Counted from the first letter of the whole stretch, positions 3,501 to 29,318 are shown. The stretch: 62,952 bases of DNA, filler included, from Ministeria vibrans ATCC 50519 (GCA_943704425.1; 13 parts of 13 records of this genome joined end to end with filler, not necessarily neighbours in it), one strand, 5' to 3'. Translations and numbers: made by a program. The notes: generated from the sequence alone by a model not told the origin.

Positions 3501-5611
3501 TACCACGAAAAGCTCCACGAGACATCATCTCACCTTGAATTTGGCTTTTAGTCTGTTACAGCAGCGACATTTCCAGTTGCTGGGCCGTGCAGTAAGCATT
3601 CCCGAGCTGCTCTCCGAGCGCTTCAATCGTATGCTGCGTGCGTCAGTGGACCATGCCATTGCCCGCTTTGAGGCCCGCGACATCACCAGCATTATGGAAT
3701 TAGAAGGTATTTAAGCACGAAGCGCCACTCAACAAGAGTTTATTTTATTCTTGTTCTTTGCAGGTCTCCTGCAACAGTGCGAACTAACGCACAGTTTTCT
3801 TCGGGAGCATCTACCGCACATGGACGACTTTGAGACGATTGTACGTGAGGTCGACGAGGCCCCGAGCTTTGCCACCAACAACGGTCGTGTCATGAACCAC
3901 GTCCTTTCCGAACTCGTCTGGGATTTCCTCCCTAACTACGCATACAACTCGGGAACCGACCAGTATGTCCAATAAAGAAATTAAAAAACTTCACGCACTC
4001 ACTCACGCTGTTTTTAACATTGTGTTTAGCTTTGTACGACCCACTATCTCGGTACCGCTTGGCCCCGACGTTCCGCGCGAACCCATGCCTAAACCCAACC
4101 CTATTCTCCTGTGCGGAAACCGCGCCATGTCTCAGGGTACGTGCGAAGAGCTTTGTGCGTTGCTCATTTTTTTTTTCAGCGTGGTCTGCTCTGTTTGAGA
4201 GCTACAAGGACACGGTGGGTGCGCCGCAAGTGAGTGCGCTTGTGCGTGTGATTGGCAGTAACAATGTTTCCACTCTCATCGAAGAACTCATCAAGAATCT
4301 TGTACGTTTACCTCTTGACTTTGACACACCAAAACAAACCTAATGCTCTGTGTGTTTTTTTTTGTATGTATTTATTTTGTAGGAAATTCAACTGAAGAGT
4401 ATCATTCAGCCATACATTGAGTCGCTGCAGCGCGGTCTCCCAGTCGAGATGAAGCTGCCAATCCACGGCTACGGTACCACCGGCACGTTCTCCTACTACG
4501 TGGCCAAGCTCGAGCCGCTGCTCCAGTACACCGAACTCCGCTCAGAGGTTCGTACATACACGCTTTTTACTGCGAACGGAAGCAAAGAAATCATAACAAT
4601 ATTAACACTTTGTGTTTGTCTTTAGGTGTTCCATGCACTGCGTGAAATGGGCAACTCGCTCATTTTTACGCAGATGATTGAGCAGGTCATGGTGGCGGAG
4701 GACATCTTCAACAATGTTCAGGCAACACCTTTTTACCATTTTGGTGGCGTGGGCTCAAACGTAAATCTTTTTTTTTTTTTTGTTCTTTGCTTGTTTATTC
4801 ATTTGCTTATGGAGCATGTCTTCTTTTTTTTGACTGTACACAGAAAATGGACATGTTCTTTCCGAGCGACCACAATGTGCGTCTGCAAACGCCCACCACA
4901 GCCTTCTCCAACGTGGTGAACCGTCTGTCACAGGGTACGCCGAGTGTCGAACCTCTGCTGGATCGTGCACAGCGAGCAAGTGTGATACATGCGCCGTATC
5001 GCCAGCGCGGCTCTCTCTTCCTGACGCTTTTGCGTCGTCTCGACCGTTTCCTCGATGACATTCGCGACGTTTGGTTGGGAGCGTACCCAGTTAACGGAGT
5101 CATGACCATTGACGAGACGGCCGAGTTTCATCGTCTTTGGTCGGCGCTTCTGTTTGTCTACAACATGCCTACGGTGGGCGGCAGCAGTGCCGGTGAGGCG
5201 GTCAACATGCAATCGTGCAAGGCGGTCTTTGGCGAAGGTCTCCCGTGGGTGGGGGCAACCATTCTGTACCTGCTGGGTCAACGACGTGGCTTTGAGCTTC
5301 TCGATTACTCTTCGCGTGTGCTCAGCGTCTTCGGCATTGACCATAAGGTAGAGAGTGCTGGTGGCATTGACGTGGGACAATTTTTGCGTCAGGCATCGGA
5401 CACAAAGACATTGAACACGAGCATTTTTGCCACGCTTCGTCTGACCATGCCCGAGCGTGACTCAGCCAACGGACTCATCGGCCGCGCACACCCTCCGTCG
5501 GAGCCTGGCGAGGTGGGCATGTACGTCCCCTACAAGGGCGAATTTGGCACGGCCGAGCAGAAGGCTGTGAGTAAGATTGAGGCTGGAGCAGGTTCGGGTA
5601 CGCGTGTCTGA
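589..5611 (+). CDS. CYFIP: CYFIP/Sra-1/PIR121 (WAVE complex subunit), multi-exon; 5' exons probably extend upstream of 589
   Basis: Spliced exons give IYACRSKSKAIPQ, LKSFMRFQ, DNIKNMKTAWNNDF, REQSAWKYAHP, DLSELWLREFYLE..IQFPIEQSLPWILT, YNDA..L..RFLFDEIEAEVNLCFD, EFHRLWSAL, all characteristic of CYFIP; GT-AG introns; TGA at 5609-5611. Confidence 0.95.
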
Positions 5612-10777: not shown

Positions 10778-13064
10778 TCAGTGGTTTCGCTCCTGAGGTG
10801 GCTGGTAGGCAACGCCAAGTGCCTCGTACACGGACTGCTCAGTAGGCGTGACCAGTGCTTCCCCAACACTAATCTTGTCTCCATTACCTCGCGCCACATT
10901 GATTCGCAGTGCGTGTTGAGACAACGACATTCCGCGATCCTAAGTCAAATTTTAAGTAATAATAATAATTATTATTATTATTATTTTAATAGTATTATTA
11001 TAATATAATTATCTCGCTCACTCTCTCTCTTACCTTTGCATATTTCCGCATGGAGCGATTGGTGTAGTCACTGCCGGTGAAGTAGAGTAGCGAACAGGCG
11101 TACTCTTCGCTGGGCACACAAATAATGTCAAGGCGGCGTGCACGGTGTGTCGGTGACAGACGACACACTCCCATGTACTTGTCATGTGTGTTGGGCTCGC
11201 GCACCGCTCCCGTACCCGTACGAGTCGTCTCCCACTCGTGCCGCGACGACAGTGATGCCTTGGTGCCCAACAGAAACCCCTCGGAAAAGAGTCGCTCAAT
11301 GACACAGGCAAGAATGCCTTCGTGGTCGCCCCCAGGGTTGGTCACAAGCACATCCACATCCCCACACGTCTCCTTCAGGCGCCGATACGAGCCGCACACC
11401 TCCCATGTCGCACCAGCACACACTTCCTTCACCACTGCGCCCACTCGCGCTCCAATCTCACCAGCCTCGTCGCGTGGCATGCGCTCCTGCAAATCATAGA
11501 AATACTCCAATGCCAACGACTGACGTCGATCCAACAGTCGCAGCTGGCGCAACTCATCACGACGCGCAATCGCTTCCTCGCACGAACGCACGCCATGTTC
11601 CATCCATTGGCGTGCACGTGACTGCCCCACACCCCACACACGCTCCAAGTCGGCAATCACATGTGTGTCCTTGGGCACATTCTCAAACTTCTCGTACGTT
11701 CCTTTCAGCAAAATCTCTCCGATATGATCGGCAATCTTGGCCCCAATGCCATGCAGCACACGTGCCTCCTCCATCGACTCAATACGCTTGCCGTGTCGCT
11801 GCAACGCACTAATCGCCTTTCGATAGCCCAACGCATTCCACTTCTTCTCGCCCCCCTCCGCCTTGTACAGTGTCATCATTTTTGTCAGCGGCCCCGTCAA
11901 ATGCGCATTGACATTATTTTTTTCCACCTGCGACACCAACGACACGTGCGACTGCTTGTCGTCACCCTTGCCAATTGCACCAGTCTTCTCTCCGATGCGC
12001 GACGACGATCCCACCGCAAACACAAAGCTCCCCATATTCTTAGGCTCGGCCTTTTGCATAAACGGCGCACCCGCACGACGCATCTCCTCAATGCGTGCCC
12101 GTGCTCGCCGCCCCGCTTCGCTCACAACCACCGCGTCTTCCTCCTCTCCTTTTTCTTCTCCTTCCTGTTCCTCCTCCTCCTCCTCACGCCCTTCCTCCAC
12201 ATCGCTGCTCTGCGGGCCAACAGGCGAGTCGCCACTATTGGCGACACGTCGACTTGACACACGCCGCATGGCAGCCTCGCGCGTGTAGCCGTACAGACCG
12301 TCACCGCGTAAAAGACGCGGTGATTTCACAGGCGATGGTAGGTTGGGCGCTTGAATGGCGTAGGGCTCTTCGTGCGGGCGAGTCGTCGTGCCATGCTTTG
12401 CAATGTCATACATCCAGCCCACCGAGACAAAGTGCTTGTCGCTCGGCAGTTCAACCAGCTTCAGAGCACTCAGCAGCCCCGCATAGTCAAGGGTGCTGAC
12501 CACGTGTGTCGTAGACGAATTCAACTCGGTACTCACCACACCGCCGTGCTTCTCGATGTTTGCCTTGAAAATGGAAAGAGTCACTTTTCCGAGACCGCGT
12601 CGCACAAAGTGCACTTTCACGCCATGCAAGAAGTCGGTCAGACTCTTGGCTTGACCAGCTTTCGACAATGCACCACCTTCACTGGTGGATGGCGCACAAC
12701 TCGTGGTCATTGCGGAACGACGAGCAGCTGCGGACGACGACGAAGGCGAAGACGAAGACGACGAAGACGAAGACGTAGGCGCCAGAAACGGCTGCGACAG
12801 AGGCCGTTGACGCGTCGTCGTGACCGTTTGCGATGCATGGACACCAGATGCGTCTGCTCGTGGTCCAGAGACCCGCTCGTCCGTGCGTTTGTCAGGCGTG
12901 TCAAGACGCGCTCGCTTTTCGTCGCGCCGCTCCACAAGGATCGCACGCACGCGCTTAAAACGAACAGGCTCGCGCGACACCACCAACGATGCTGCCTCCT
13001 CGTCAATCAGCTCCGACCAGGTGCGATCAAGGCGTTCAAAAAACTCGCCTGGATCCCAAGTCAT
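10778..13064 (-). CDS. POLL: DNA polymerase lambda (family X): BRCT, lyase and polymerase domains; 1 intron
   Basis: BRCT (THVV..VGW), YRKAISAL, GIGAKIA, VWGVG, GSYRR..TCGDVDVL, RRLDII, LLYFTGS..NRSMR; last exon GMSLSQHAL..PTEQSVYEALGVAYQPPQERNH*. Confidence 0.93.
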
Positions 13065-13316
13065 AGAAATGAAATAAAGTTGAGAAAATCGAAAAATCAA
13101 AAGATGAAAGAAAAAGACGTAATAATAATATTATTATAATTATATGAGCTGCTTGAGCTCTCGAGCACAGTTCTCGATTCTCTTTTTTATATTTATTTTA
13201 TTAGCTCTCGATTCTCTGTTTGAAAACTGATACGTCACTCAGGCTCTATTGACAGACTGAACGTCAGTCTACTCCGTTCGCTTTTCCAATTGTGTACAGT
13301 TTCATTCTTCATTCAC

Positions 13317-17388: not shown

Positions 17389-18609
17389 TCAGCCGAGAGT
17401 GGCGGAAGTGGTTCCGAAGATAAAGTGTGGGTGAATGTGCGAGGGATAACCCTTTGTGTACATTCGAATCAGCAAAAACGACCTACAACAACAACAAGTC
17501 CTTTTAGTCTTCTTTTTTTTTGTGTGTGTGTGTGAATTGTCTCTCACTGTTCAGGCGCAATTTGCTTGACCATTTCAATTCCAAGCGGATTCAACGACGG
17601 GACGTCGATTGAAAAAATCCGGTCAGCGTCGCCAACAAGTTGCGTTGCACTGTCGTTTCGGGTGTGCATTGAATCAATTAGTGCCTTGAGAAGATTCTCC
17701 GCCACAGATGTTGTCTAAAAAAATGACATAGCCGTTCACATAACACACACACACACACCACAAAGAACCAAAAAGACAGACAGACAAAGCACGACAATAA
17801 AAACGCACTCACACACATAATTATAATAAATAATAATAACGATTAATTATAATGGATTATTATTATTAGAAGTATACATAAACACACACACACACACACA
17901 ATCATAATAATAATTATAACTATTATTATAAATAATATTAATGAAAGCCAACAAGCTGAGAACCGTCTACCATTGCAAACAGAGGACCGACACGCAGAGT
18001 CAATTGTCCGCGACGCACCGCTCCAAATCCGTTGATCTCTTGTGTCGTAGAGTCGATTGAAACAAGTGATATGCTCTCGGGCAGCCTGATCCAGTGGGCG
18101 AGGAACGCTTCTCGCTGTGCCGGGAAACACAGCTGATCGAAGTTTGAAAGCTGATCAAAATCAACATCGCTTGCGCGTTTGAGCTCGCCATGACGAATAT
18201 CGCCGGTGTAAGGGCGGACCACGCCGGAATAGCGCATGCTAGTGTACGCGCGACGGAAGCCGCTCTTCTCGTACGTCTTCTCCTCCTGCGGCACTGCATC
18301 CAGTCCCACATTTGCCGCACCGGCATGGCTCAGCGCGTGCCCGAATATCTCCCGCCCATAGCCACGCCCGCGCATGTCTTTGCGCACAATGTAAAAGCCG
18401 ACAAAGGCCTCGCCGCCGTTCACAACACAACTGCACATTGCAATGATTTCGTCGCTTTTCTCCGCTCGCAACACAAAGAAGCCCTGCGGATCGGACGCGA
18501 AGAACGACGCACCGTCATGCACGCCCGGATTCCACTGCTCCTGGCGCGCCCACGCCATGAACACATCCACAACGGTGTCCTTGTCAGCCAGGGAGATTGT
18601 GTGCGGCAT
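17389..18609 (-). CDS. Tandem GNAT acetyltransferase (YitH/holothin-acyltransferase-like); 3 exons
   Basis: EQWNPG, GFYIVRKDMRGRGYG, GLDAV..YEKSGF, RVGPLFA|TTSVAENLL..IDVP..|RMYTKG..IFGTTSATLG*. Confidence 0.88.
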
Positions 18610-18699
18610 GGCATGCGTATGACAATGAACCTAGGTCGTCACAAAAATAATAACAATAAGTCAACAATTGATCGATCATCATTCAAAAAATTTCTCGTA

Positions 18700-21195
18700 A
18701 TGAAACTTCTCACTGCTTCTCACATTGAACTGGGACCCACCTCGGACCCTACGTGGACTGTGGCCGTCCATCTGAACGACGGCCAGGGTCGTCTGCTGGT
18801 GGCACTCCTCGACGAGCATCTCATTCGAGTGCTGCACGTCCCCGCCTCCAACACGCTTCTGGTGCCGCGCTCCTGGAGCACAGTGCCGCCCCTGCATGGG
18901 GACGACCCCATCGACGGCCGCGAGCGCATCAGCAACGTCGGCTACCCGCTGCGCTCCCCTGCAGGCGTCAGCATTGCCGACGACGGCACAAGCGCGTCGC
19001 TCGCCACGACATTAGTGCGTCTCGACATTCGCTGTTGTCCCTCTCTGCGCCTTGGCTTCTTCTGCGCACAGAGCGGCGACGAACTCGCGCAGGACACCGA
19101 CACCAACGCGTACTTTGTGGGCGAGCCCGACTGTCACGAAGCAGCGGGTGCGTGGATGAGGCACACGGTGCGCCGCCTCGACGGCCAGCGCTTCTTTGGG
19201 CTCGGCGAAAAGACCGGTCCGCTGGAGCGTACGGAACGTCGCTACCGCATGGCATGCGTCGACGCCATGGGCTACAATGCCGAGCTGTCAGATCCGCTGT
19301 ACAAACACATCCCGGCGCTTGTGGTCAAGACGCGTCACTCAGCGTGCGCCTTTGTCTACGACGTCCAAGGCGAAATGGCCTTCGACACAGGCTGCGAACG
19401 CTCCAACTACCACGGCATCTACCGCACCGTTGAAGCACCGCGCGGCGCCGATCTAGACATGTATTGTGTGGCGGGACCGCGGCTGCGCGACGTCGTTCCG
19501 CGCCTGGCGCGCCTGTACGGTGGACATGCATTCTCGCCAAAATGGGCGCTGGGCTACTCTGCTTCCACCATGGCCTATACCGACGCCGCGGAGCCCATGG
19601 AGGCGTTTCGGGAGTTTCTCGCTCGGTGTGCGACGCACCACGTGCCCTGCGACTCCTTCCAGCTCTCCAGCGGCTACACCCTCATCGATGGGAAGCGGTG
19701 TGTCTTTACGTGGGATCGCTCGCGGTTCGATCCGCTCGAGCTCAGTCGCATGTTCGAAGAGGCGCAAATGCGTCTGGCGGCCAACGTCAAGCCGTGTCTG
19801 CTTACGACACACCCGCTGTACGCCGAGGCGTTGCGCCAGCGGCTGTTTGTCGAGACGGCGCAGGGAGAGGCGGTTGTTGAGCCCTTCTGGGCGGGCAGTG
19901 GGTCCTTTCTGGACTTTTTGCGCCCGCAGACACGCGAGTGGTGGCAGCGCAAGCTCAGTGAGGAGGTACTGGGAATGGGGATTGGGACAGCGTGGAACGA
20001 CAACAATGAGTATGAGATTGCAAGTGCGCATGCACAAGTGAGGGTGGGGGCTCTTGCGCAGAGCGCAGTCGATGATGAGGGCGGTGGCGTCGACGACGAT
20101 GACGCATTCATTGGTAGGGGTACGCTCGTGCCATTGGACCGACTGCGGCCTGTCATGGCGCTGCTTATGACGCGCGTGTCGTACGAAGCGCAGTGTGCGC
20201 GTCGGCCCCGCGAGCGGGCGCACGCCATTGTGCGCTCGGGTGGGCTGGGAGTGCAGCGGTACGCACAGACGTGGAGCGGAGACAATGCGACGTCGTGGCA
20301 CTCGCTCAAGTGGAATATTCGAATGGCGTCGGGACTGTCCCTCTCAGGAATTTTCAATCATTCACACGACTGCGGTGGGTTTAGTGGTCCCACGCCGGAC
20401 GCGGAGCTTCTCACGCGATGGGTCGAGTCGGTCCTGTTGCATCCGCGCTTCACAATGCACTCGTGGAAAGACGACGGTACCGCTACCATGCCCTGGCTGC
20501 ATCCAGGCACACCTACCGAGCATGTGGTCGGGCTGCTGCGTTTGCGCTATTCCCTCCTGCCTCATTTGTACACGCTGCTTTGGCGCGCCGTCCACTACCA
20601 CGAGCCAATTGTGCTGCCCGTGCTCTACTATTATGGCGAGGAGGAAGAGGAGCACAACGGCCCGTGCTGGGCCGACTCCGATGCCTACCTTGTGGGTGAG
20701 TCCCTGCTGCTGGCGCCTGTCACTGCACCCGCTGAAAGCACGAAGCGCGTGTGGTTGCCGCTTGCGGCCGGCGCGCACTGGACCAATTGGTACACGGGAG
20801 AGCAGCATTGTGGTGCGCAATGGATCACGGTGAGTGCTCCTGTGGGCAATGGACCGCCCATGTTTGTGCGGAGTGGCTCTGTGGTGGCGGTGACAGACAA
20901 GCCGGGCGAGAGGGTGGCGCACGGAGACCGTCAGCGCGCGCTTGTGGTGTTTCCGCCAGGCCTTGGTCAGGCGCCACTAGTCGACGTCGAGGTGTTGTAC
21001 GAGGACGACGGTCTGACGCGCGACGGCCCTGCGTGTATCTACTCGGTTGATGTGAATGTCGAACGCCAGTCGGACAGCACCGAGCAGGTGTGGGTGGTGA
21101 TGCGCCGTCGTGGTGATTTCGAGCCACCTTATGGTGAGATTGATGTCAGGTTAGGACCGAACGATGATCGAGAGTTGGTGTGTATTCGACAGTGA
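18700..21195 (+). CDS. Glycoside hydrolase family 31 alpha-glycosidase, Aec37-like, intronless
   Basis: FGLGEKTG, DAMGYNAE.SDPLYKHIP, FQLSSGYT, WNDNNEYEI (nucleophile region), QRYAQTWSGDN, HDCGGF, PRFTMHSW. Confidence 0.93.
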   Translation: MKLLTASHIELGPTSDPTWTVAVHLNDGQGRLLVALLDEHLIRVLHVPASNTLLVPRSWSTVPPLHGDDPIDGRERISNVGYPLRSPAGVSIADDGTSASLATTLVRLDIRCCPSLRLGFFCAQSGDELAQDTDTNAYFVGEPDCHEAAGAWMRHTVRRLDGQRFFGLGEKTGPLERTERRYRMACVDAMGYNAELSDPLYKHIPALVVKTRHSACAFVYDVQGEMAFDTGCERSNYHGIYRTVEAPRGADLDMYCVAGPRLRDVVPRLARLYGGHAFSPKWALGYSASTMAYTDAAEPMEAFREFLARCATHHVPCDSFQLSSGYTLIDGKRCVFTWDRSRFDPLELSRMFEEAQMRLAANVKPCLLTTHPLYAEALRQRLFVETAQGEAVVEPFWAGSGSFLDFLRPQTREWWQRKLSEEVLGMGIGTAWNDNNEYEIASAHAQVRVGALAQSAVDDEGGGVDDDDAFIGRGTLVPLDRLRPVMALLMTRVSYEAQCARRPRERAHAIVRSGGLGVQRYAQTWSGDNATSWHSLKWNIRMASGLSLSGIFNHSHDCGGFSGPTPDAELLTRWVESVLLHPRFTMHSWKDDGTATMPWLHPGTPTEHVVGLLRLRYSLLPHLYTLLWRAVHYHEPIVLPVLYYYGEEEEEHNGPCWADSDAYLVGESLLLAPVTAPAESTKRVWLPLAAGAHWTNWYTGEQHCGAQWITVSAPVGNGPPMFVRSGSVVAVTDKPGERVAHGDRQRALVVFPPGLGQAPLVDVEVLYEDDGLTRDGPACIYSVDVNVERQSDSTEQVWVVMRRRGDFEPPYGEIDVRLGPNDDRELVCIRQ

Positions 21196-21450
21196 AGGAA
21201 CAACAATACGTTCGATTGCGTTTTTCGCGACTCGCTCCCCTTTTGACGGACTTTCGACGCTGCTCTTCCAGTGAGTACTTATTGATTATACTAAGAAAAA
21301 TACATAGAGAGCTGATTCAGCCTGCTTTCTTATTTGAGATCAAATAAACATTCAAGTTTTTAGTCAACAATCCAAGAGAATTAATAGAGAATTAATAGTG
21401 ATGAGTGAATGATTACAATCATTAGAATCAACCACCAAAATTATTCACAC

Positions 21451-22875
21451 ATGTCTTCAGCAACGACTTCAACGACAACCACCGCTGCTGCTGAGGGCAG
21501 TCTCGCGGCGAAGAAGGCCGAGGAAGAGACGCGGTTCCGCGAGCGCTTTCTGATCGCCGGAATGAATGAGCCCAACGCACGCGAAAAGGCCCGCAGCAAG
21601 GCCCGCGAGGCTCTCGACGAGATGATCACGTTCATCACCCCCTTGGTGCACAAGGACGCCGGTATTCACTTTGTGCTCTTTTTTTTGCTTACAAAAAAAA
21701 ATGCGATGAGCAATCTTGATTCTTTTTTTTTTCTTTGCATAACAATCTCTCTCTGATTCTCTCTCACTTTGCTTTGTCCAGGGGCGGACGAGCCTGCAGC
21801 GCTTCCGCCACGCATCATGGCACTGCTGCTGCGTGTCGGCGACGACGCCAGCATGCTTGGGAATGTGCCAGTGCGCAACATGTTCCTCTCGCTGATTGCC
21901 GACGGACGCATTGAGCGCGAAGAACAGATCGCCATTGCGCTGCGACACTTCAAAATGGACATGCCGACGCTGGAAAAGCTCTGTGGCGTTGGTGTGGTGG
22001 TGGGTGCCGACGAGATTGCCGCTGTCGTTGCGGCAGTTGTCGAGGAGCACCGTGCAACGCTTGTCGAGCAGCGCTACCGAGCGCCCGTCGGCAAGATGCT
22101 TGTCGAGGCGCGCAACCGCATCCCGTTTGCCGTGAGCAAGGCAGTCCGCGAAGAGTTAGATCGACAAGTTGAGGCGTTGCTCGGTCCCAAGACGGAGGCG
22201 GACATGGGCAAGAAGCCCAAGCAGAAGAAGGGCCAAGCGAGCACCGCCACCGCCACCGCCACCGCCACATCGACAGCAACAGCAGCCACCGCCGATGCCA
22301 GTCCCAGTAGCAGCAACACGGAGGCAGAGCAGATTGTGACGCCGTGGGAGGTACACGGAAGCAGCGACAAGGGCGTCGACTACGAAAAGCTCACGCGCGA
22401 CTTTGGTTGCGAGCGCATCACTCCAGACCTTTTGGCGCGCATGGCACGCGTCACAGGGCAGCCAGTCCACACATTCCTGCGTCGCGAACTGTTCTACTCG
22501 CACCGTGACCTGCATGCGCTGCTGGACACGGTCGAGCAAGGAAAGCCGTTTTACCTGTACACAGGACGCGGGCCCAGCTCGGAGAGCATGCACTTGGGCC
22601 ATTTGGTGCCCTTCTTGTGCTGTGCCTACCTCCAGCGCGCATTCAATGTTCCCATTGTCATCCAGATGACCGACGACGAAAAGTTTCTCTGGAAGGACTA
22701 TCTCTCGCTCGAGAAGGCTCATTCGTTGGCCTTTGAGAACGCAAAGGATATTATTGCGGCCGGTTTTGATCGCGAGAAAACGTTCATTTTTGTCGACTCT
22801 GACTTTGTGGGTGGTCCCTTTTACAAAAATATGGTCAAGTTTCAGCGTCGCGTGACATTCAATCAGGCAAAGGGC
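21451..22875 (+). CDS. WARS1: Cytosolic tryptophanyl-tRNA synthetase with GlnRS-type N-terminal domain; 3' exons absent
   Basis: [57 protein letters not shown]; donor GTAAG at 22876; no KMSAS exon visible. Confidence 0.95.
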
Positions 22876-23017
22876 GTAAGACAATAATACTACTAAGAGA
22901 GTGAGAGACATTTCACACTCATTTACTCAACTCAAACCGCACGTCTGATCACAATTTCACCCACTCTCTTGCAATTCCACTCAGTTTCATTTCGCTCACT
23001 CAATCACATTCATTTTT

Positions 23018-23225
<208 letters not shown>

Positions 23226-23268
23226 TTAGTTTGTCCCTTTTCGCTCTCTTCTTCTCTCAGTCTCATAC

Positions 23269-23934
23269 GTCCTTGGGAACAAGTTGAAACTCGGGAGTGA
23301 GCGGGACTAGTTCAACACGAACATCGTTGACTGCCGCGCTGACTTTGTACATTCCGTAAGTGGGGGGACACACCAGAATGGCTGTAAACGAGGATGAGAG
23401 ATCACCAATGACACACACGAATAAGATATTTCTACCGTCCTTGCCGGGAACACAGAAGATGCGCATCAGCAGATCGATGGCTTCGTCGCTGCCGACGCCC
23501 GTGAAGACGTTCTCTGGCGCAATGCCACTGTAACATAGAGTGAGCTCCCTCTGGCGTTGCGAGCGCCCCAGACAAGGTCTGCGTACCGGAAATCAGCAAC
23601 ACGGCGCTTCAGGTCGAGCTGGTAGGGACACGGGTAGCGGTTGAGGCCTTCGTGGGCGTGTGCCTGGCGGAGAGAGGGAAAGGAGAAACCATTGATCAAT
23701 AGTAAGAGGCACTGTTGCGGCGGATGCGGTGGCGTACGTCGCTCGTTACAGACCCGTAGGCATTCTCATTGGCGTCAAGGAGGATCCCTGGACGAGAGGG
23801 GCGTGAGATCAGAGAGACTGAGTCGAATTTTGAGTACCGTCGCTGTAGTCGTCGCGAGCGCACCGATACGGCACAAGCGCAAGAACGTTGGGTCGCACAA
23901 GGGCCGCCAGAGCTGTTTCAGCGCTGTCAGTCAT
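23269..23934 (-). CDS. HIS5: Histidinol-phosphate aminotransferase, 5' part only
   Basis: VRPNVLALVPYRCARDDY|ILLDANENAYG|LNRYPCPYQ..|ENVFTGVGSDEAIDLLMRIFCVPGKD|..PPTYGMYKVSAAVNDV. Confidence 0.93.
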
Positions 23935-24252: not shown

Positions 24253-25481
24253 CTACAACGGCGCACCATTACCCGTAGCCTCACTATTAAGCACGTCCAC
24301 CCATGATGCAAACCGAACGCCTGTCTGAACATACACACACACACACAGACAGTCGTCAAGTCAATACAACCTCTCATCCACTGTCAAAGTGTACCTTGAG
24401 CAGCGCAGCTTTCAATTGCGGTGCACACAGCAACTTCAACTCATGCTGTCGCTCCTTTGACCGATTAAACTCGTCCACTACATTACAACATAAAAAAAGA
24501 GAATATGGAAGTGTAACACAGTGCGTACGTCGCTCAGAACACTCTCCCGGATGGCACATCCACTCTACCGAGCGCACTCCTTCTTGACCACAGAGCCCCT
24601 CTACTGCGTGTACTACACGCTCAATGGTCAGGTGGGCGCCCATTAGAGCCAGTCCAACAAACCCACTTGTTGTGGTGAGACCCTAAGAAGGAAGACGGAG
24701 AACGTCAAAGAGACCGATGATCATCCGCGCATTCTTTCCTCACTTGGCGTCTGAATATATCTCGACTGACGGCCCCATACCGAGCAACTGTGCAGAGAAA
24801 TTCAGAAGGGACGAGCCACTCGCAAGAGTATATTTGAGGCTGAGTGAGAGGAACAGCGTTAGCCAAAGGTTGATGGGCATCGTTTTGTTTACGTCGTCTG
24901 GCACTCGAATCGCGCACAGTCCAGACTGGCGCATGACACGAGCAACAATGGGTGCCACATGTGGCCACACGTGAACATGCTGGTGGCCGTCGACGTGGGT
25001 TGGATCGGCGCCAACTTGTGTGCGAAACCATTCGATTTGTGCTTTGATCTCTCGAGTGACTTCGTCCATTGCTAACTCATCGAATCTGAGGGAGGTAGCA
25101 GAGGCGGTGGAAAGGCAACAGCGTCAGTCGAGCCAATGACATGGGGATAGCAGCAGTCGAAGAGAGCGCGCCTTACTCGTCGGATTCAGTGAAGTGGTGA
25201 AAGTGAAATTTGCCTCGGAAGTTCCCGTCCGCTCCGACCAGGCGTCGCAGCCCTTTGGAGACTGGCCTTCCCTCGGTAAGGTTCAAATGAAGTCCCAGCG
25301 GCAGTGAAGCATCCACAGCGCGCTCGATGGCCCGTGACTGGCAGTATGACGAGCAGTTGTCCACCAAGTTGCACACAAGCGATGCCGACGTGACACAGCC
25401 CTTTGCAAAAGCCTCGAGAATGCCACTGTCGCGCCCATCACACATGCCGTAGTCATCGGCATTGATGACAATCAGCTTCAT
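24253..25481 (-). CDS. YDJC: YdjC/ChbG-family carbohydrate deacetylase; multi-exon
   Basis: INADDYG, GVTSAS-like CVTSASL, GLHLNLTEG, EIKAQIEWF, THVDGHQHVH, EWMCHPG, R.HEL.LL. Confidence 0.92.
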
Positions 25482-25916: not shown

Positions 25917-26969
25917 CTAGAAATCTCCAATTTTCCAGTGATCGTGCCAGGTAAAAGAGAAGCTGTCGTGGTCGGCAGGTTGCATGGGCAACCACACGTA
26001 GGTAGCGTTGCTAACAGAGCCAACGCCACTGTTGTTCCAGTCGTCGCCCATGTAGATAAAGAGCTCCTTTCCCGTGTTTGGGTGTATGTAAGGAAGGACA
26101 AAGGTCGATTGAGAGTTAAAGGTGGTCGAAGAACCGGATGGATTGCCCAACGAGGTCCAGGAGGCCCCCGAGAGGTTTGGGGACCAGGCGAGAATGGCCG
26201 CGTTGGGCGACCAACCCGTCAGGTGACTGCCAAGCAAGTAGTAGCGACCGCCCGACTTGAAGATGCACTGCCCTTCCATCTTGGGTCCGCGCGACACGAT
26301 GCCCGTCGTGTTGAGAAAATCTTGGGTGAGCTTGGAGATGCCCGCGTACTGATTGTCGACGGAGCGCACAAGCCAGGCGGAGTCGCCCTCGGCGTACAAA
26401 CCCATATCGAGACTACGCTGACCATCCGGCTGGAATCCATGCACCCACTCAAAGGGACCCTTTGGATTGGCGCTCTGCGCAACGCCCACGGCGCCCATAG
26501 AGAACGAGCTGGTGTCCAGATGGAAATACATGACATATTTTTGAGTGTGTGCGCAAAAGACAACCTTGGGGCGCTCAATGCGGTACGGACCGGGCTGCCA
26601 AACGTCCACAATGCTTGTGTTGTGGAACACCACCCCGTGGTCTGTCCACGTCCCAAGGTCGGTCGACGTGTACAGCGTGATACCCTCCGACAGCCAACCC
26701 GGCTGTGTTTTGATCGAAGTTCCATACCAGTGGTAGAGCGTGCCGACTTTCAGGATGCCGCCGCCGTGAGCATGGATATTCTTGCCACTGGTGTCGGTGG
26801 GGAGCGGGTAGCCCGGAGAAATGACCGTATTCTGCGCCATCAAAACAAACAAACAAACGTTGAAGTGAAAAACATAATCACACACACAAACAACCTCAGG
26901 ATTGGGCGCAGCAACCGTCAGTGCAACAAAAGACCATGTAGCTAGTAGGATGCAAGCGGGTAGATGCAT
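25917..26969 (-). CDS. Secreted glycoside hydrolase family 43 (GH43_24-like galactanase/arabinanase type); 1 intron
   Basis: Signal peptide; IHAHGGGILKVG..YHWYG, IERPKV, SLDMGLY, HLTGWSPN, TFNSQSTFVLP, YMGDDW, YVWLP. Confidence 0.9.
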   Translation of the reverse strand: MHLPACILLATWSFVALTVAAPNPEVVCVCDYVFHFNVCLFVLMAQNTVISPGYPLPTDTSGKNIHAHGGGILKVGTLYHWYGTSIKTQPGWLSEGITLYTSTDLGTWTDHGVVFHNTSIVDVWQPGPYRIERPKVVFCAHTQKYVMYFHLDTSSFSMGAVGVAQSANPKGPFEWVHGFQPDGQRSLDMGLYAEGDSAWLVRSVDNQYAGISKLTQDFLNTTGIVSRGPKMEGQCIFKSGGRYYLLGSHLTGWSPNAAILAWSPNLSGASWTSLGNPSGSSTTFNSQSTFVLPYIHPNTGKELFIYMGDDWNNSGVGSVSNATYVWLPMQPADHDSFSFTWHDHWKIGDF

Positions 26970-27191
26970 TCTTTGAGGCAAGCGTTTATTTTTGACAGAA
27001 ATTTGACTTTTCGACAGTCGCCAGTCGACTTCCTTTTTTCGTCCAACCGGTCGAGCATAATGATTAATGATTAATTAATTACTTTTTACTTGGTCAGTAC
27101 TCAGTGGTCACTTTTTTTTTCTCTTCCCTGACCTCAAGTTGTCAACCAACACGTACATACATCCTACAAACCCTTCCCGTCCATTGTTTCA

Positions 27192-29318
27192 ATGAGCATC
27201 GAAGCGTCACGATCGCTCGAAGAGTCGACCCCCAAAAATTTTGAGGCGACCCTCAAAAATTTGCAATCAAATAATATTGCAACTCCTGCCAAGGCTCAAC
27301 CGGCCGTGGACTGCGGCACCCAACGTACAGCATCAATGGAAAGTGTCGCGGACAGCAGCAGCGAAGACGATGCGTCGGCGGGATCGTCAGACGAGTCGTC
27401 GTCTCCAAGTTCGACCGAGAACCCAGTGCTGGTCGAATCCTCAACAGCTCAACCCAAACTCACCAAAGCCCAGCTTCAGGCTGAAAAACGGATCAATTGC
27501 ACAAGCAATCTTGTTGACAAGCTGACCAAGGACAAGAACTTCGCGGAGTCCATGAAGGTGTGTGAGTCTTTCTTCAACAAATACGCGAGTGAGTACGTCG
27601 ACAGTCACGCGTACGATTGTCAACTTGCCTTGATCTATGTGGCTCTGGGGCGTGCCCATGTCCACTTCAACAACAAGAAAAAAGGACTGGAGCTCTTCTT
27701 CAAAGCGTTTGACATTGAGACCAAGCGTGGTGTCGAGGAGGCCACGCGAATAACCATGGTGGACCACATCTGCCGCCTGGCCATGAAACTCGACGATTTT
27801 ACCACGATGGAAGACTGCTTGGCCCGCCACATGACGCTGGCACGCCCCAACGGCCCTTTGCCGAGCCGGGTGGAAATCCAATTGGCCATGGCTGAGAAGC
27901 TCATGCAGGCAGATTTAAACGACAAGGCAGTGACACTCCTACAAACGCTGCTGGCGCGGGTCCACGAACATTCCGACAGCGACCACGACGCTAACAAGGC
28001 GCTGGAGGCTTCTATTCATCATACACTTGCGCAGTCACTCACAAATGCAGCCGCGCTCCTTCCAGATCGACAGCTGGATGCGTTGAAGCAGCCTGAGCAA
28101 AAGGACGACCAGACGGCCGAGGACACCACCAGCCTAACGGTGGCCACGGGTACTGGTGCCCCTGCTAAGCCTCATGAGACGGCTAGCGAGATGGCACGTA
28201 AACTTCTGGCCAAGGTCAATGCGGATGAGGAGCACCGCCAGAAGTGCAAGGAGCTTATTGAGGATTGTGTCCAGGTAGAGAACAAGCAACTGACAACGGC
28301 CAGTGAGCACTCGAGCAAGGCGGTGGAGCTCGCACGTGGACTCTACGACAAGGGAACGTTCTCGTGGACCGATCTCACCAATACTCTGGTGCAGCATGGT
28401 ACAGTGTTTACACGTCTCGAGAAGTACGACGCGGCACAGGCGGCGTTGAGCGAGGCAAGGGGCGTTGCGCTTGAGGAGATGGCCAGATTCGGCGTCGAAG
28501 TGGAATCGTCAACAGCCACGACGAAGCGCAAGGATGCAGATGCAACCCCCGAGACCAATGTGTACGCCGCTCAGGCTGTTGGTGCCGTGACGCTGTTCTG
28601 TGTCGTTGCTGTCCGGCTCAGTAAGCTTGCGCACACCAGACTGACATCGAGACCCGCAACGGAGTCAGCCGGAAAATCGAGGTCTAAGTTGAAGACTGAG
28701 GAGTGTGCCAATCGCATTCAGGAGCGCATTGCACACGTTGAGAAGCCTATTTTGGAGGCTATAAGCGCGATTGATATGCTCTGCTTGCAATTTTTGCTTG
28801 ACCGCGCGATTGCACGTTGTCTATGGAACATATTGAAGGAGCTGCAGGTACATGTTCAGCGGGTGCTGCCTGCCACTGCCAGCCTTCAAGAGGCCCAGAG
28901 TGCTCTGGGCATTGCTCGCCGGTTGCAAGGCGTGTTTGAGCACATTTTCAATAGTGTGAATTTACTAAAGGCAGCGCTATGGCTCAAGTACGCTCGCATG
29001 GACACGGCGCTGTGCCTGATTGCCTGCGCACGCTTCCAGACGGGTCGACAACTATCAAAGGGCAAGCACTCGCTGGCCGAGGCCATCAGTCTCTTGCACG
29101 TGACGACCCCCGATGCGCCTCTGAATACCCCTGACGTGTGCTTGGAGTTGAGCGTCGCAGCGCACGTGTACATTCTCCAGAGCAAGACGGAGCTTGCCCT
29201 AACCTGTGCTCAGGCAGCCTACACGGCCACATGCACTCTCGTGGAGGACTATCCTGACTCGGTTGAGGCACGCCATGCAAAAGAGGTCTGCAGCAAGACA
29301 CTGATGCAAATTGGCTGA
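27192..29318 (+). CDS. 708-aa intronless alpha-helical (TPR-like) hypothetical protein
   Basis: Long single ORF, Ala/Leu-rich helices (YVALGRAH..KGLELFFKAF; LEKYDAAQAALSEAR). Confidence 0.7.
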   Translation: MSIEASRSLEESTPKNFEATLKNLQSNNIATPAKAQPAVDCGTQRTASMESVADSSSEDDASAGSSDESSSPSSTENPVLVESSTAQPKLTKAQLQAEKRINCTSNLVDKLTKDKNFAESMKVCESFFNKYASEYVDSHAYDCQLALIYVALGRAHVHFNNKKKGLELFFKAFDIETKRGVEEATRITMVDHICRLAMKLDDFTTMEDCLARHMTLARPNGPLPSRVEIQLAMAEKLMQADLNDKAVTLLQTLLARVHEHSDSDHDANKALEASIHHTLAQSLTNAAALLPDRQLDALKQPEQKDDQTAEDTTSLTVATGTGAPAKPHETASEMARKLLAKVNADEEHRQKCKELIEDCVQVENKQLTTASEHSSKAVELARGLYDKGTFSWTDLTNTLVQHGTVFTRLEKYDAAQAALSEARGVALEEMARFGVEVESSTATTKRKDADATPETNVYAAQAVGAVTLFCVVAVRLSKLAHTRLTSRPATESAGKSRSKLKTEECANRIQERIAHVEKPILEAISAIDMLCLQFLLDRAIARCLWNILKELQVHVQRVLPATASLQEAQSALGIARRLQGVFEHIFNSVNLLKAALWLKYARMDTALCLIACARFQTGRQLSKGKHSLAEAISLLHVTTPDAPLNTPDVCLELSVAAHVYILQSKTELALTCAQAAYTATCTLVEDYPDSVEARHAKEVCSKTLMQIG

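What the first reader, a model, noticed from the sequence alone, without database searches (positions are those of the whole stretch)
21451..22875. TrpRS fused to the N-terminal tRNA-binding domain of eukaryotic GlnRS
Seen: about 200 aa (F..AGMNE..ARE; [19 protein letters not shown]; [16 protein letters not shown]...V...VEEHR..LVEQRY; [33 protein letters not shown]) run through an Ala/Thr linker into [20 protein letters not shown]. The junction lies inside one exon (21782-22875). Established: these motifs, including the GVG hinge, mark the GatB/YqeY-like N-terminal domain of yeast Gln4 and human QARS (tRNA_synt_1c_R1/R2), which enhances tRNA binding. TrpRS appendages I know of are WHEP (vertebrates) and AlaX-like (apicomplexans). 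Inference: a domain swap between class Ib and Ic synthetases, which could change tRNA-Trp affinity, tRNA range or synthetase-complex membership. I do not know of this architecture being described.
Basis: partly seen in the sequence, partly recalled or inferred. Interest (0 to 1): 0.9.

Follow-up and report, generated by a model that had tools for sequence, protein, structure and literature searches.

The report
TrpRS carrying a GlnRS-type N-terminal domain
This protist's only cytosolic tryptophanyl-tRNA synthetase really does carry, in one expressed polypeptide, a copy of the tRNA-binding N-terminal domain of glutaminyl-tRNA synthetase, but public protein sets already hold the same fusion in at least 13 named choanoflagellate species, so it is a new, divergent member of an existing though apparently undiscussed architecture.

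Summary
One uninterrupted exon (21782-22875) encodes Pfam tRNA_synt_1c_R1 (1.1e-17), tRNA_synt_1c_R2 (2.8e-9), a Lys-rich and Ala/Thr/Ser linker, then the N-terminal half of a eukaryote-type TrpRS (human TrpRS 7.6e-72).

An independent DNA contig has the identical junction. RNA-like contigs from three studies splice out intron 1 and run through the junction. They then continue into an exon that lies on another contig of the same assembly (C2235). The gene is therefore whole (about 642 aa by coordinates), and contig C475 is probably mis-joined in a (CT)n intron repeat.

The organism's GlnRS keeps its own NTD, so this is a domain duplication, not a swap. No second cytosolic-type TrpRS was found.

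The architecture is not unique. Public sets show it in at least 13 named choanoflagellate species, including the NCBI/UniProt Salpingoeca rosetta protein. Gene content (opisthokont EF-1alpha insertion, many SH2 and cadherin domains) marks the host as a heterotrophic holozoan, probably a choanoflagellate or close relative.

The likely role is a cis-acting tRNA-binding module; the GVG hinge is kept. No paper describing the fusion was found. Interest is moderate.

The parts
21451..21661 (+). Exon 1 (70 codons plus 1 nt), start codon at 21451. It encodes a Thr/Ala-rich N-terminus followed by helix-like '[28 protein letters not shown]', which by position corresponds to the first helices of the GlnRS NTD.
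   Evidence: Reading. RNA-like contigs cover it from 21449 or 21468 and join it to exon 2. No significant family hit for this exon alone. A second in-frame ATG lies at 21409 in AT-rich sequence, with no RNA contig laid over it.
21662..21781 (+). Intron 1, 120 nt, GT..AG, T-rich.
   Evidence: The joint 'skips 120, GT..AG' appears in contigs of runs X8, X17 and X18. It is present in the genomic contigs.
21782..22875 (+). Exon 2, a single open frame that holds the whole junction: GlnRS-type NTD, linker, then the N-terminal half of TrpRS.
   Evidence: Identical in the independent DNA contig L014. Contiguous in RNA-like contigs; record coordinates run without a gap across 22235-22315.
21856..22131 (+). 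Match to Pfam tRNA_synt_1c_R1 (profile positions 61-160 of 162).
   Evidence: 1.1e-17 in the whole exon, 1.6e-18 for the NTD piece alone. The AF2 model is helical here with pLDDT 85-98.
21985..21993 (+). Gly-Val-Gly hinge between the two NTD subdomains (within CGVGVVVG).
   Evidence: Sequence. The column is conserved in the fused TrpRS and GlnRS rows. In yeast Gln4, G112-V113-G114 is the hinge, and mutating it lowers tRNA affinity (PMC3333875).
22144..22314 (+). Match to Pfam tRNA_synt_1c_R2 (profile positions 1-54 of 94), including LLGPKTEAD and the Lys-rich run GKKPKQKKG (about 22207-22233).
   Evidence: 2.8e-9; alignment.
22237..22323 (+). Low-complexity Ala/Thr/Ser linker (ACC/GCC codon repeats) between the NTD and TrpRS.
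   Evidence: AF2 pLDDT is below 50 for exon-2 residues 150-179.
22324..22875 (+). TrpRS part of exon 2: the eukaryote-specific N-terminal extension (VTPWEV...) and the first half of the Rossmann fold, with the HIGH-type motif HLGH at 22591-22602.
   Evidence: PF00579. Human TrpRS 5ujj/2quh at 7.6e-72. Foldseek 1r6u at 4.9e-13, rmsd 2.2 A.
22876..23042 (+). Start of intron 2 (donor GTAAGA) and unique intron sequence up to the repeat.
   Evidence: RNA-like contigs leave the window at 22875/22877 and continue with the 30-mer that is unique to G000:C2235:47796-47825.
23043..23222 (.). (TC)n array interspersed with copies of CTATCACTTTGTTTC. This is the probable point of the assembly mis-join; the mRNA does not use what follows on this contig.
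   Evidence: TRF and motif hits. A similar repeat precedes TrpRS exon 3 on C2235. The independent contig L014 stops at the repeat border.

Best explanation
The locus is the 5' part of the organism's single cytosolic-type tryptophanyl-tRNA synthetase gene. By coordinates, its eight exons give about 642 aa; exons 3-8 are on contig C2235.

The protein has three parts: an N-terminal paralogue of the GlnRS N-terminal domain (two helical, GatB/YqeY-like subdomains joined by a Gly-Val-Gly hinge, followed by a Lys-rich stretch), a disordered Ala/Thr/Ser linker of about 30-45 residues, and a complete eukaryote-type TrpRS core (HLGH and KMSSS motifs).

Shown here: the architecture, its transcription and splicing, the fold prediction, and retention of the hinge. 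Also shown: the organism's GlnRS keeps its own NTD, and the same architecture occurs across choanoflagellates.

Inferred: the appended domain works in cis as an auxiliary tRNA-binding module. It would grip the tRNA body by hinge closure, as proposed for Gln4 and GatB, and lower the Km for tRNA-Trp. This is the role other eukaryotic synthetases fill with Lys-rich, EMAPII-like or WHEP appendages.

Also inferred: the fusion arose once, by duplication of the GlnRS NTD, in an ancestor shared with choanoflagellates.
For: - Domains: Pfam R1, R2 and tRNA-synt_1b, all above their cut-offs, in one exon.
- PDB sequence matches to human GlnRS 69-217 (8.5e-17) and human TrpRS (7.6e-72).
- AF2 model: a confident helical NTD and a disordered linker. 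Foldseek finds the yeast Gln4 tRNA-binding domain 3tl4 (2.2e-5, target-normalised TM 0.59, 150 columns) and human GlnRS 4ye9 (1.3e-6), besides TrpRS structures.
- An independent DNA contig has the identical junction.
- RNA-like contigs of 1808-1993 nt from three studies remove intron 1, span the junction and join 22875 to the exon at C2235:47794.
- Exons 3-8 on C2235 carry KMSSS and the C-terminal helices and end in TGA.
- Among the PF00579 loci of the genome, only C475 and C2235 match eukaryote-type TrpRS.
- Only two R1 loci exist in the genome. The second is GlnRS, with R1, R2 and the catalytic domain.
- GVG hinge conserved; its function in Gln4 is given in PMC3333875.
- About 20 fused homologues, of which 12 are named choanoflagellate species.
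- The AU test does not reject a clade of the window plus the choanoflagellate TrpRS (p 0.219).
- The residue equivalent to Gln4 W160 is Phe in the window and in most TrpRS-linked NTDs. It is Trp in the own GlnRS and in the GlnRS P0155.
Against: - No biochemical data exist for any member.
- Exon 1 and the first ~24 residues of exon 2 show no significant similarity to R1 positions 1-60, so the first NTD subdomain may be divergent.
- The W160 equivalent is Phe. In Gln4 the W160F variant bound tRNA less well.
- The 180-column TrpRS core tree leaves the window outside the choanoflagellate clade in an unresolved position.
- A profile of choanoflagellate TrpRS-NTDs scores the window NTD (73 bits) no better than GlnRS NTDs (86 bits for P0155; 37+29.5 bits for the own GlnRS pieces). 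A single origin is therefore not demonstrated.
- The runs used are only guessed to be RNA and are contigs, not reads.
- The full-length protein was never assembled or searched as one sequence.
Confidence: 0.6

Rival explanations
1. The appended NTD is mainly a protein-protein docking or regulatory module, for example anchoring TrpRS to a multi-synthetase or other complex or serving a non-translational role, rather than a tRNA-affinity enhancer.
For: Appended domains of eukaryotic synthetases often mediate complex assembly (general knowledge; PMC6794377 and PMC4394549 were listed but not read in detail). The W160-equivalent Trp is replaced by Phe in nearly all TrpRS-linked NTDs, which may signal a changed ligand. 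The N-terminal subdomain is divergent.
Against: The GVG hinge, the LLG.KT motif and the Lys-rich tail, all linked to RNA binding in Gln4, are retained (PMC3333875). No partner is known, and no complex was tested here.
Confidence: 0.2
2. The fusion in this organism arose independently of the choanoflagellate one, by a separate capture of its own GlnRS NTD (convergence), or reached it by gene transfer.
For: The best pairwise match of the window NTD is to the organism's own GlnRS piece (48% over 56 aa), against 30-44% to choanoflagellate TrpRS NTDs. R2 is detected by Pfam in the window but not in the Choanoeca proteins. The TrpRS core is not placed inside the choanoflagellate clade. The choanoflagellate NTD profile does not favour the window NTD over GlnRS NTDs.
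Against: The domain order is the same, the linker is in a similar place and the total lengths are similar (615-660 aa). The Phe at the W160 position is shared. The AU test does not reject one clade. Host gene content is holozoan or choanoflagellate-like. The pairwise stretches are short.
Confidence: 0.25
3. The fusion is an artefact: a chimeric assembly, or a gene model that merges two genes.
For: Contig C475 is evidently unreliable just downstream: truncated genes meet at a (TC)n repeat. The assembly has 2860 contigs and comes from a metagenome.
Against: The junction lies inside one open exon with no repeat boundary other than the codon-level ACC/GCC run. It is identical in an independent DNA contig and in spliced RNA-like contigs from three studies. 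The same architecture occurs in about 20 other proteins, many of them complete ORFs from transcriptomes.
Confidence: 0.02

Closest known systems
Choanoflagellate TrpRS with an N-terminal tRNA_synt_1c_R1 domain, e.g. Salpingoeca rosetta PTSG_04448 (P0177), Choanoeca perplexa EP00045_P007052 (P0003), Savillea parva (P0163), Didymoeca costata (P0170)
   Same: Same domain order: GlnRS-type NTD, then a basic/low-complexity linker, then eukaryote-type TrpRS. Similar length (615-660 aa against about 642). GVG hinge, LLG.KT motif and Phe at the Gln4-W160 position.
   Different: Only 36-45% identical over exon 2. The window also scores on Pfam R2, whereas its first subdomain is less recognisable. It is not placed inside the choanoflagellate clade in the 180-column core tree. 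These proteins are database entries only; no publication on them was found.
N-terminal domain of eukaryotic GlnRS (yeast Gln4 residues 1-187, PDB 3TL4; human QARS, PDB 4YE6/4R3Z)
   Same: Homologous by sequence (8.5e-17 to human GlnRS 69-217) and by predicted fold (3tl4, TM 0.59). Two helical subdomains with a GVG hinge and a basic tail. This is the proposed tRNA 'sensor' related to the GatB helical and tail domains (PMC3333875).
   Different: It is attached to a class Ic TrpRS core instead of the class Ib GlnRS core. Trp160 is replaced by Phe. The cognate tRNA would be tRNA-Trp, not tRNA-Gln.
Other N-terminal appendages of cytosolic TrpRS: the vertebrate WHEP domain (PF00458) and the apicomplexan AlaX/tRNA_edit-like domain (PF04073; PMC3680381)
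   Same: The same position, N-terminal to the eukaryote-specific extension of the TrpRS core and connected by a flexible linker. Both kinds were seen among the hits (for example P0234 and P0246 with PF00458; P0011 and P0198 with PF04073).
   Different: Unrelated folds and origins. Neither PF00458 nor PF04073 matches the window protein.
YqeY/GatB-tail domain appended to the C-terminus of Deinococcus radiodurans GlnRS (PMC1865053)
   Same: Another case of a GatB/YqeY-type tRNA-binding module recruited in cis by a synthetase.
   Different: Bacterial, C-terminal, and on GlnRS. No direct sequence relation was tested here.

Membership tests
Eukaryote/archaeal-type TrpRS (class Ic, Pfam tRNA-synt_1b) | Rossmann-fold catalytic domain with a HIGH-type signature (HxGH) | tested here: met
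   PF00579 at 24.5 bits (cut-off 21.1) on the exon-2 half. HLGH at 22591-22602. Human TrpRS 7.6e-72. Foldseek 1r6u at rmsd 2.2 A.
Eukaryote/archaeal-type TrpRS (class Ic, Pfam tRNA-synt_1b) | KMSKS-type second signature and C-terminal anticodon-binding helices | tested here: met
   These are not in the window but on G000:C2235. Exon 5 reads '...KMSSS...' and hits PF00579 positions 191-220. tblastn of Capsaspora and Choanoeca TrpRS covers the exons through to the stop. The linkage to exon 2 rests on the RNA-like contigs.
Eukaryote/archaeal-type TrpRS (class Ic, Pfam tRNA-synt_1b) | Eukaryote-specific N-terminal extension preceding the core (human residues about 64-150) | tested here: met
   Exon-2 aa 163-364 align to human TrpRS 64-265.
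Eukaryote/archaeal-type TrpRS (class Ic, Pfam tRNA-synt_1b) | Tryptophan activation and charging of tRNA-Trp | not testable with these tools
   Needs an enzyme assay. Indirect support: it is the only cytosolic-type TrpRS found among the genome's PF00579 loci.
GlnRS N-terminal domain (Pfam tRNA_synt_1c_R1 + R2; GatB/YqeY-like) | Pfam R1 and R2 matches above the gathering score | tested here: met
   R1 64.9 bits (cut-off 28.6) and R2 38.1 bits (cut-off 25.1).
GlnRS N-terminal domain (Pfam tRNA_synt_1c_R1 + R2; GatB/YqeY-like) | Complete first subdomain (R1 profile positions 1-60) | tested here: inconclusive
   The R1 match starts at profile position 61. Exon 1 alone gives no hit to Pfam, PDB, the fused-protein alignment or the choanoflagellate NTD profile. 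The joined exon 1 + exon 2 protein was deliberately not built, so it was not tested.
GlnRS N-terminal domain (Pfam tRNA_synt_1c_R1 + R2; GatB/YqeY-like) | Two all-helical subdomains joined by the conserved Gly-Val-Gly hinge | tested here: met
   GVG at 21985-21993. AF2 helices with pLDDT 85-98. Foldseek 3tl4 at 2.2e-5, target-normalised TM 0.59.
GlnRS N-terminal domain (Pfam tRNA_synt_1c_R1 + R2; GatB/YqeY-like) | Conserved Trp (Gln4 W160) packing against the hinge | tested here: not met
   The window has Phe (IPFAV), as do most TrpRS-linked NTDs. The own GlnRS and P0155 have Trp. This is a conservative change.
GlnRS N-terminal domain (Pfam tRNA_synt_1c_R1 + R2; GatB/YqeY-like) | RNA/tRNA binding that lowers Km(tRNA) | not testable with these tools
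   Known only for Gln4 (PMC3333875).
GlnRS proper (class Ib, Pfam tRNA-synt_1c) | Class Ib E/Q catalytic domain | tested here: not met
   No PF00749 in the window gene. It is present in the separate GlnRS gene on C538 (117.5 bits).
WHEP-TrpRS (vertebrate type) and tRNA_edit/AlaX-TrpRS (apicomplexan type) | N-terminal PF00458 or PF04073 domain | tested here: not met
   Neither family appears in the Pfam scan at E up to 1.

The most novel reading that the evidence does not exclude
The host may be a holozoan outside, or at the base of, the known choanoflagellates. The GlnRS-NTD-TrpRS fusion would then be an ancient holozoan or choanozoan character. Animals would have lost it (vertebrates later appended a WHEP domain at the same place), and it would measurably alter tRNA-Trp recognition or recruit TrpRS into a synthetase complex. 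Alternatively, the same fusion arose twice. Either way, it would be a natural experiment on how a tRNA-Gln 'sensor' is re-tuned for another tRNA.
Probability: 0.25. Interest if true: 0.55.

Novelty: new member of a known kind. Interest (0 to 1): 0.4.

Why it matters
Appended domains are how eukaryotic synthetases gained tRNA affinity, complex membership and non-translational roles. Here a module thought to be specific to GlnRS, and evolutionarily tied to the GatB amidotransferase, is reused on a synthetase of another subclass and kept across a whole protist lineage next to animals. That offers a simple test of whether the GatB/YqeY-type 'tRNA sensor' is a generic tRNA-body binder or can be re-specialised. 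It also adds a data point on what TrpRS carried before vertebrates appended WHEP at the same position.

It is not a unique or unprecedented architecture, because it is already visible in public protein sets. For the assembly, the finding flags a mis-join in contig C475.

Tried and rejected
- Alga hypothesis (Nannochloropsis-like, from the 29.7 Mb size and the 'algae metagenome' label). Dropped: no light-harvesting protein (that search rang in no control genome either, so it is weak) and no PsbO in the genome (control valid), while EF-1alpha carries the opisthokont insertion and SH2 and cadherin domains are abundant.
- ESM Atlas search: no usable hit.
- The search for homologous proteins with the window NTD alone found only the window's own fragment and one 249-aa R1+R2 protein. 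The length window excluded full-length relatives.
- phmmer of the NTD against the first 150 representatives saw only two fused relatives. A profile of the fused proteins was needed.
- Exon 1 against Pfam, PDB, hhalign and the choanoflagellate NTD profile: nothing significant.
- Exact look-up of a neighbouring 708-aa ORF to name the organism: not on record.
- Run X2 (DNA) laid no contig, although it holds 96% of the words. This is a filter effect, not absence.
All searches were exon by exon and by reference. The 642-aa length is arithmetic on coordinates.
- The aminotransferase and Met2-like labels for the truncated neighbours rest on weak Pfam hits (0.03 and 0.001) plus reading by eye.

Full report
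**What is in the window.**
The finding's piece (8965-31585) is the whole of contig C475 of a 29.7 Mb, 2860-contig eukaryotic assembly. On the + strand an ATG at 21451 opens exon 1 (21451-21661). A 120-nt GT..AG intron follows (21662-21781), then exon 2 (21782-22875), which ends at a GTAAGA donor. The split codon G|GG keeps the frame.

Exon 2 is one open frame. Its translation carries three Pfam domains, each above its curated cut-off:
- tRNA_synt_1c_R1: 64.9 bits, aa 25-116.
- tRNA_synt_1c_R2: 38.1 bits, aa 121-177.
- tRNA-synt_1b: 24.5 bits, aa 253-344.

Against PDB sequences, residues 30-172 match human GlnRS 69-217 (8.5e-17) and residues 163-364 match human TrpRS 64-265 (7.6e-72). An AlphaFold2 model built on an alignment of 24 relatives gives a confident all-helical N-terminal domain (pLDDT 85-98). 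It also gives a disordered stretch at residues 150-179 and the first half of a Rossmann fold. Foldseek retrieves TrpRS structures (1r6u, 4.9e-13). It also retrieves the yeast Gln4 tRNA-binding domain 3tl4 (2.2e-5, target-normalised TM 0.59 over 150 columns) and human GlnRS 4ye9 (1.3e-6).

**Is the junction real?**
- A Logan contig from a different run (L014, 1774 bp) carries the same genomic sequence, intron included. It has a few upstream differences and an identical junction.
- The stretch occurs in runs of ten studies.
- Contigs from three runs of three studies, guessed to be RNA, skip exactly the 120-nt intron and run uninterrupted from exon 1 through the NTD, the linker and the TrpRS half. 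Their record coordinates are continuous across the low-complexity 22235-22315 region that the tool masked.
- These are contigs of runs only guessed to be RNA. The precise GT..AG excision is nevertheless what spliced mRNA would give.

**The rest of the gene, and an assembly problem.**
After 22875 the window holds a (TC)n array (23043-23222) interspersed with the 15-mer CTATCACTTTGTTTC. Beyond it lies the 5' part of an aminotransferase-like gene on the minus strand, which itself breaks off at the repeat.

The three RNA-like contigs leave the window at 22875/22877 and continue GTTTGGGTTCGCTGGGGACAGCAACATCGG. That 30-mer occurs once in the genome, at C2235:47796-47825, directly after a similar repeat and an AG acceptor.

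From there six further exons encode the rest of a eukaryote-type TrpRS, including KMSSS and a TGA stop. In L011 coordinates they are 3795-3955, 4068-4133, 4201-4306, 4606-4695, 4808-4898 and 4947-5056.

C475 is therefore most likely mis-joined inside the repeat-bearing intron 2. This does not touch the NTD-TrpRS junction.

**Swap or duplication; the only TrpRS?**
R1 matches only two loci in the genome. The second, on C538, is GlnRS, with R1 (32.5 bits), R2 (62.2 bits) and the class Ib catalytic domain (117.5 bits). GlnRS kept its domain, so TrpRS gained a copy.

Among the nine tRNA-synt_1b matches in the genome, eukaryote-type TrpRS queries match strongly only C475 and C2235; they give only weak hits (about 1e-4) on C1696 and none on C313 or C2077. 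The rest look like TyrRS or organellar enzymes. The fused gene is thus the working cytosolic TrpRS.

**How common is the architecture?**
- A HMMER scan of 1.84 billion representatives returned the window's own fragment, a few fused proteins and many ordinary TrpRS.
- A profile of the fused proteins then found about 20 proteins of 546-810 aa annotated PF04558+PF00579.
- Twelve of them resolve to named choanoflagellates of both major orders: Choanoeca perplexa and C. flexa, Salpingoeca rosetta (NCBI PTSG_04448), S. infusionum, S. punica, Hartaetosiga gracilis and H. balthica, Codosiga hollandica, Barroeca monosierra, Savillea parva and Didymoeca costata. One more is an unnamed MMETSP transcript.
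- A thirteenth named species, Monosiga brevicollis, has a partial NTD detectable with a local profile. Capsaspora TrpRS has none.
- Unnamed metagenomic and Logan members fall inside choanoflagellate clades in the tree.
- Five full-text searches found no paper that mentions this fusion.

**Who is the host?**
- The genome lacks PsbO. A search for light-harvesting proteins also found none, but that family rang in no control genome, so it carries little weight.
- Its EF-1alpha carries the insertion GWEVDRDKNGKASGKTL at the site of the classical opisthokont insertion (the marker is recalled from established knowledge).
- It has at least 28 SH2 domains, one of them on C2235 itself, and at least 48 cadherin repeats in very long ORFs.
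- This points to a heterotrophic holozoan, most likely a choanoflagellate or near relative. That is an inference, and the organism could not be named.
- In a 180-column TrpRS-core tree the window sits unresolved just outside the choanoflagellate clade. An AU test does not reject uniting them (p 0.219).

**One origin or two?**
Evidence that leaves this open:
- The window NTD's best pairwise match is the organism's own GlnRS (48% over 56 aa).
- A choanoflagellate TrpRS-NTD profile scores it no higher than GlnRS NTDs.

Evidence for a shared origin:
- All TrpRS-linked NTDs share domain order and length.
- With few exceptions they also share Phe where GlnRS has the conserved Trp (Gln4 W160), the window included.

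I favour a single origin, weakly.

**Mechanism.**
In yeast Gln4 the NTD is two GatB-like subdomains joined by a G112-V113-G114 hinge. Deleting the NTD or mutating the hinge or W160 lowers tRNA-Gln binding; G112P raises Km(tRNA) tenfold (PMC3333875). The window protein keeps the GVG hinge, the LLG.KT motif and a Lys-rich tail, and joins them to TrpRS by a flexible linker.

The most likely function is therefore a cis-acting, largely sequence-independent tRNA-body binding module that raises the enzyme's affinity for tRNA-Trp. This is inferred, not shown. A docking or regulatory role is the main rival.

**Verdict.**
This is a new, divergent member of an architecture already present in public data for choanoflagellates but apparently never discussed. 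It is of moderate interest to synthetase evolution and of practical interest as a flag for a contig mis-join.

Noticed in passing
window 23043-23934 (and 22876-23042): Contig C475 looks chimeric at a (TC)n repeat. TrpRS intron 2 runs into the repeat. On the other side sits the 5' third of an aminotransferase class I/II (HisC-like) gene on the minus strand, whose own intron donor (about 23268) also runs into the repeat. The family assignment is weak (Pfam 0.03 plus motifs read by eye).
   Followed up: partly
L011 (G000:C2235:44000-52000) 3081-3365, and the repeat at 3380-3730: Upstream of TrpRS exon 3 on C2235 lies the 3' end of an alpha/beta-hydrolase gene that reads like homoserine O-acetyltransferase (Met2). 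It likewise abuts the CT repeat, so several contigs may have been shuffled at such repeats.
   Followed up: partly
window 23022-23110; L013 1647-1714; L004 471-485; L012 259-444 and 5985-5999; L020 2382-2489; L011 3388-3609: The 15-mer CTATCACTTTGTTTC, embedded in (CT)n tracts, recurs in introns or spacers on six different contigs of the few sampled (C475, C538, C1696, C313, C1633, C2235). It is a dispersed repeat family of unknown nature and a likely cause of assembly breaks.
   Followed up: partly
G000:C2077:9033-9941 (L003): The strongest tRNA-synt_1b match in the genome (2.9e-58) has two in-frame TGA codons inside a 354-aa frame. This could be an intron artefact, an organellar or bacterial-type TrpRS/TyrRS, or a contaminant with TGA read as Trp. 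It was not examined.
   Followed up: no
window 21409-21453: A second in-frame ATG lies 42 nt upstream of the presumed start, in AT-rich sequence. The RNA-like contigs begin at 21449 or 21468, so the true 5' end and start codon are not fixed.
   Followed up: partly
window 21481: Contigs of two runs (X8, X18) read C instead of A, changing codon 11 from Thr to Pro in the low-complexity N-terminus. This is a strain polymorphism.
   Followed up: no
proteins P0011, P0198, P0230, P0040, P0045, P0047, P0062, P0066, P0076: Cytosolic-type TrpRS in public data carries a variety of other N-terminal additions. Examples are a tRNA_edit domain, a spermine-synthase-like pair of domains, and extensions of 250-490 aa with no Pfam match at all.
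   Followed up: no
window 10998-13100 (-), 18190-21195 (+), 25173-25481 (-), 25917-26981 (-), 27192-29318 (+): The neighbouring genes are ordinary: a family-X DNA polymerase with a BRCT domain, a GH31 alpha-glucosidase, a YdjC-like exon, a GH43 hydrolase, and a 708-aa ORF with no Pfam match.
   Followed up: partly
L013 (G000:C538) about 1954-2340: A run of N (gap or withheld stretch) interrupts the region just upstream of the GlnRS NTD exons, so the 5' end of the GlnRS gene could not be read.
   Followed up: no
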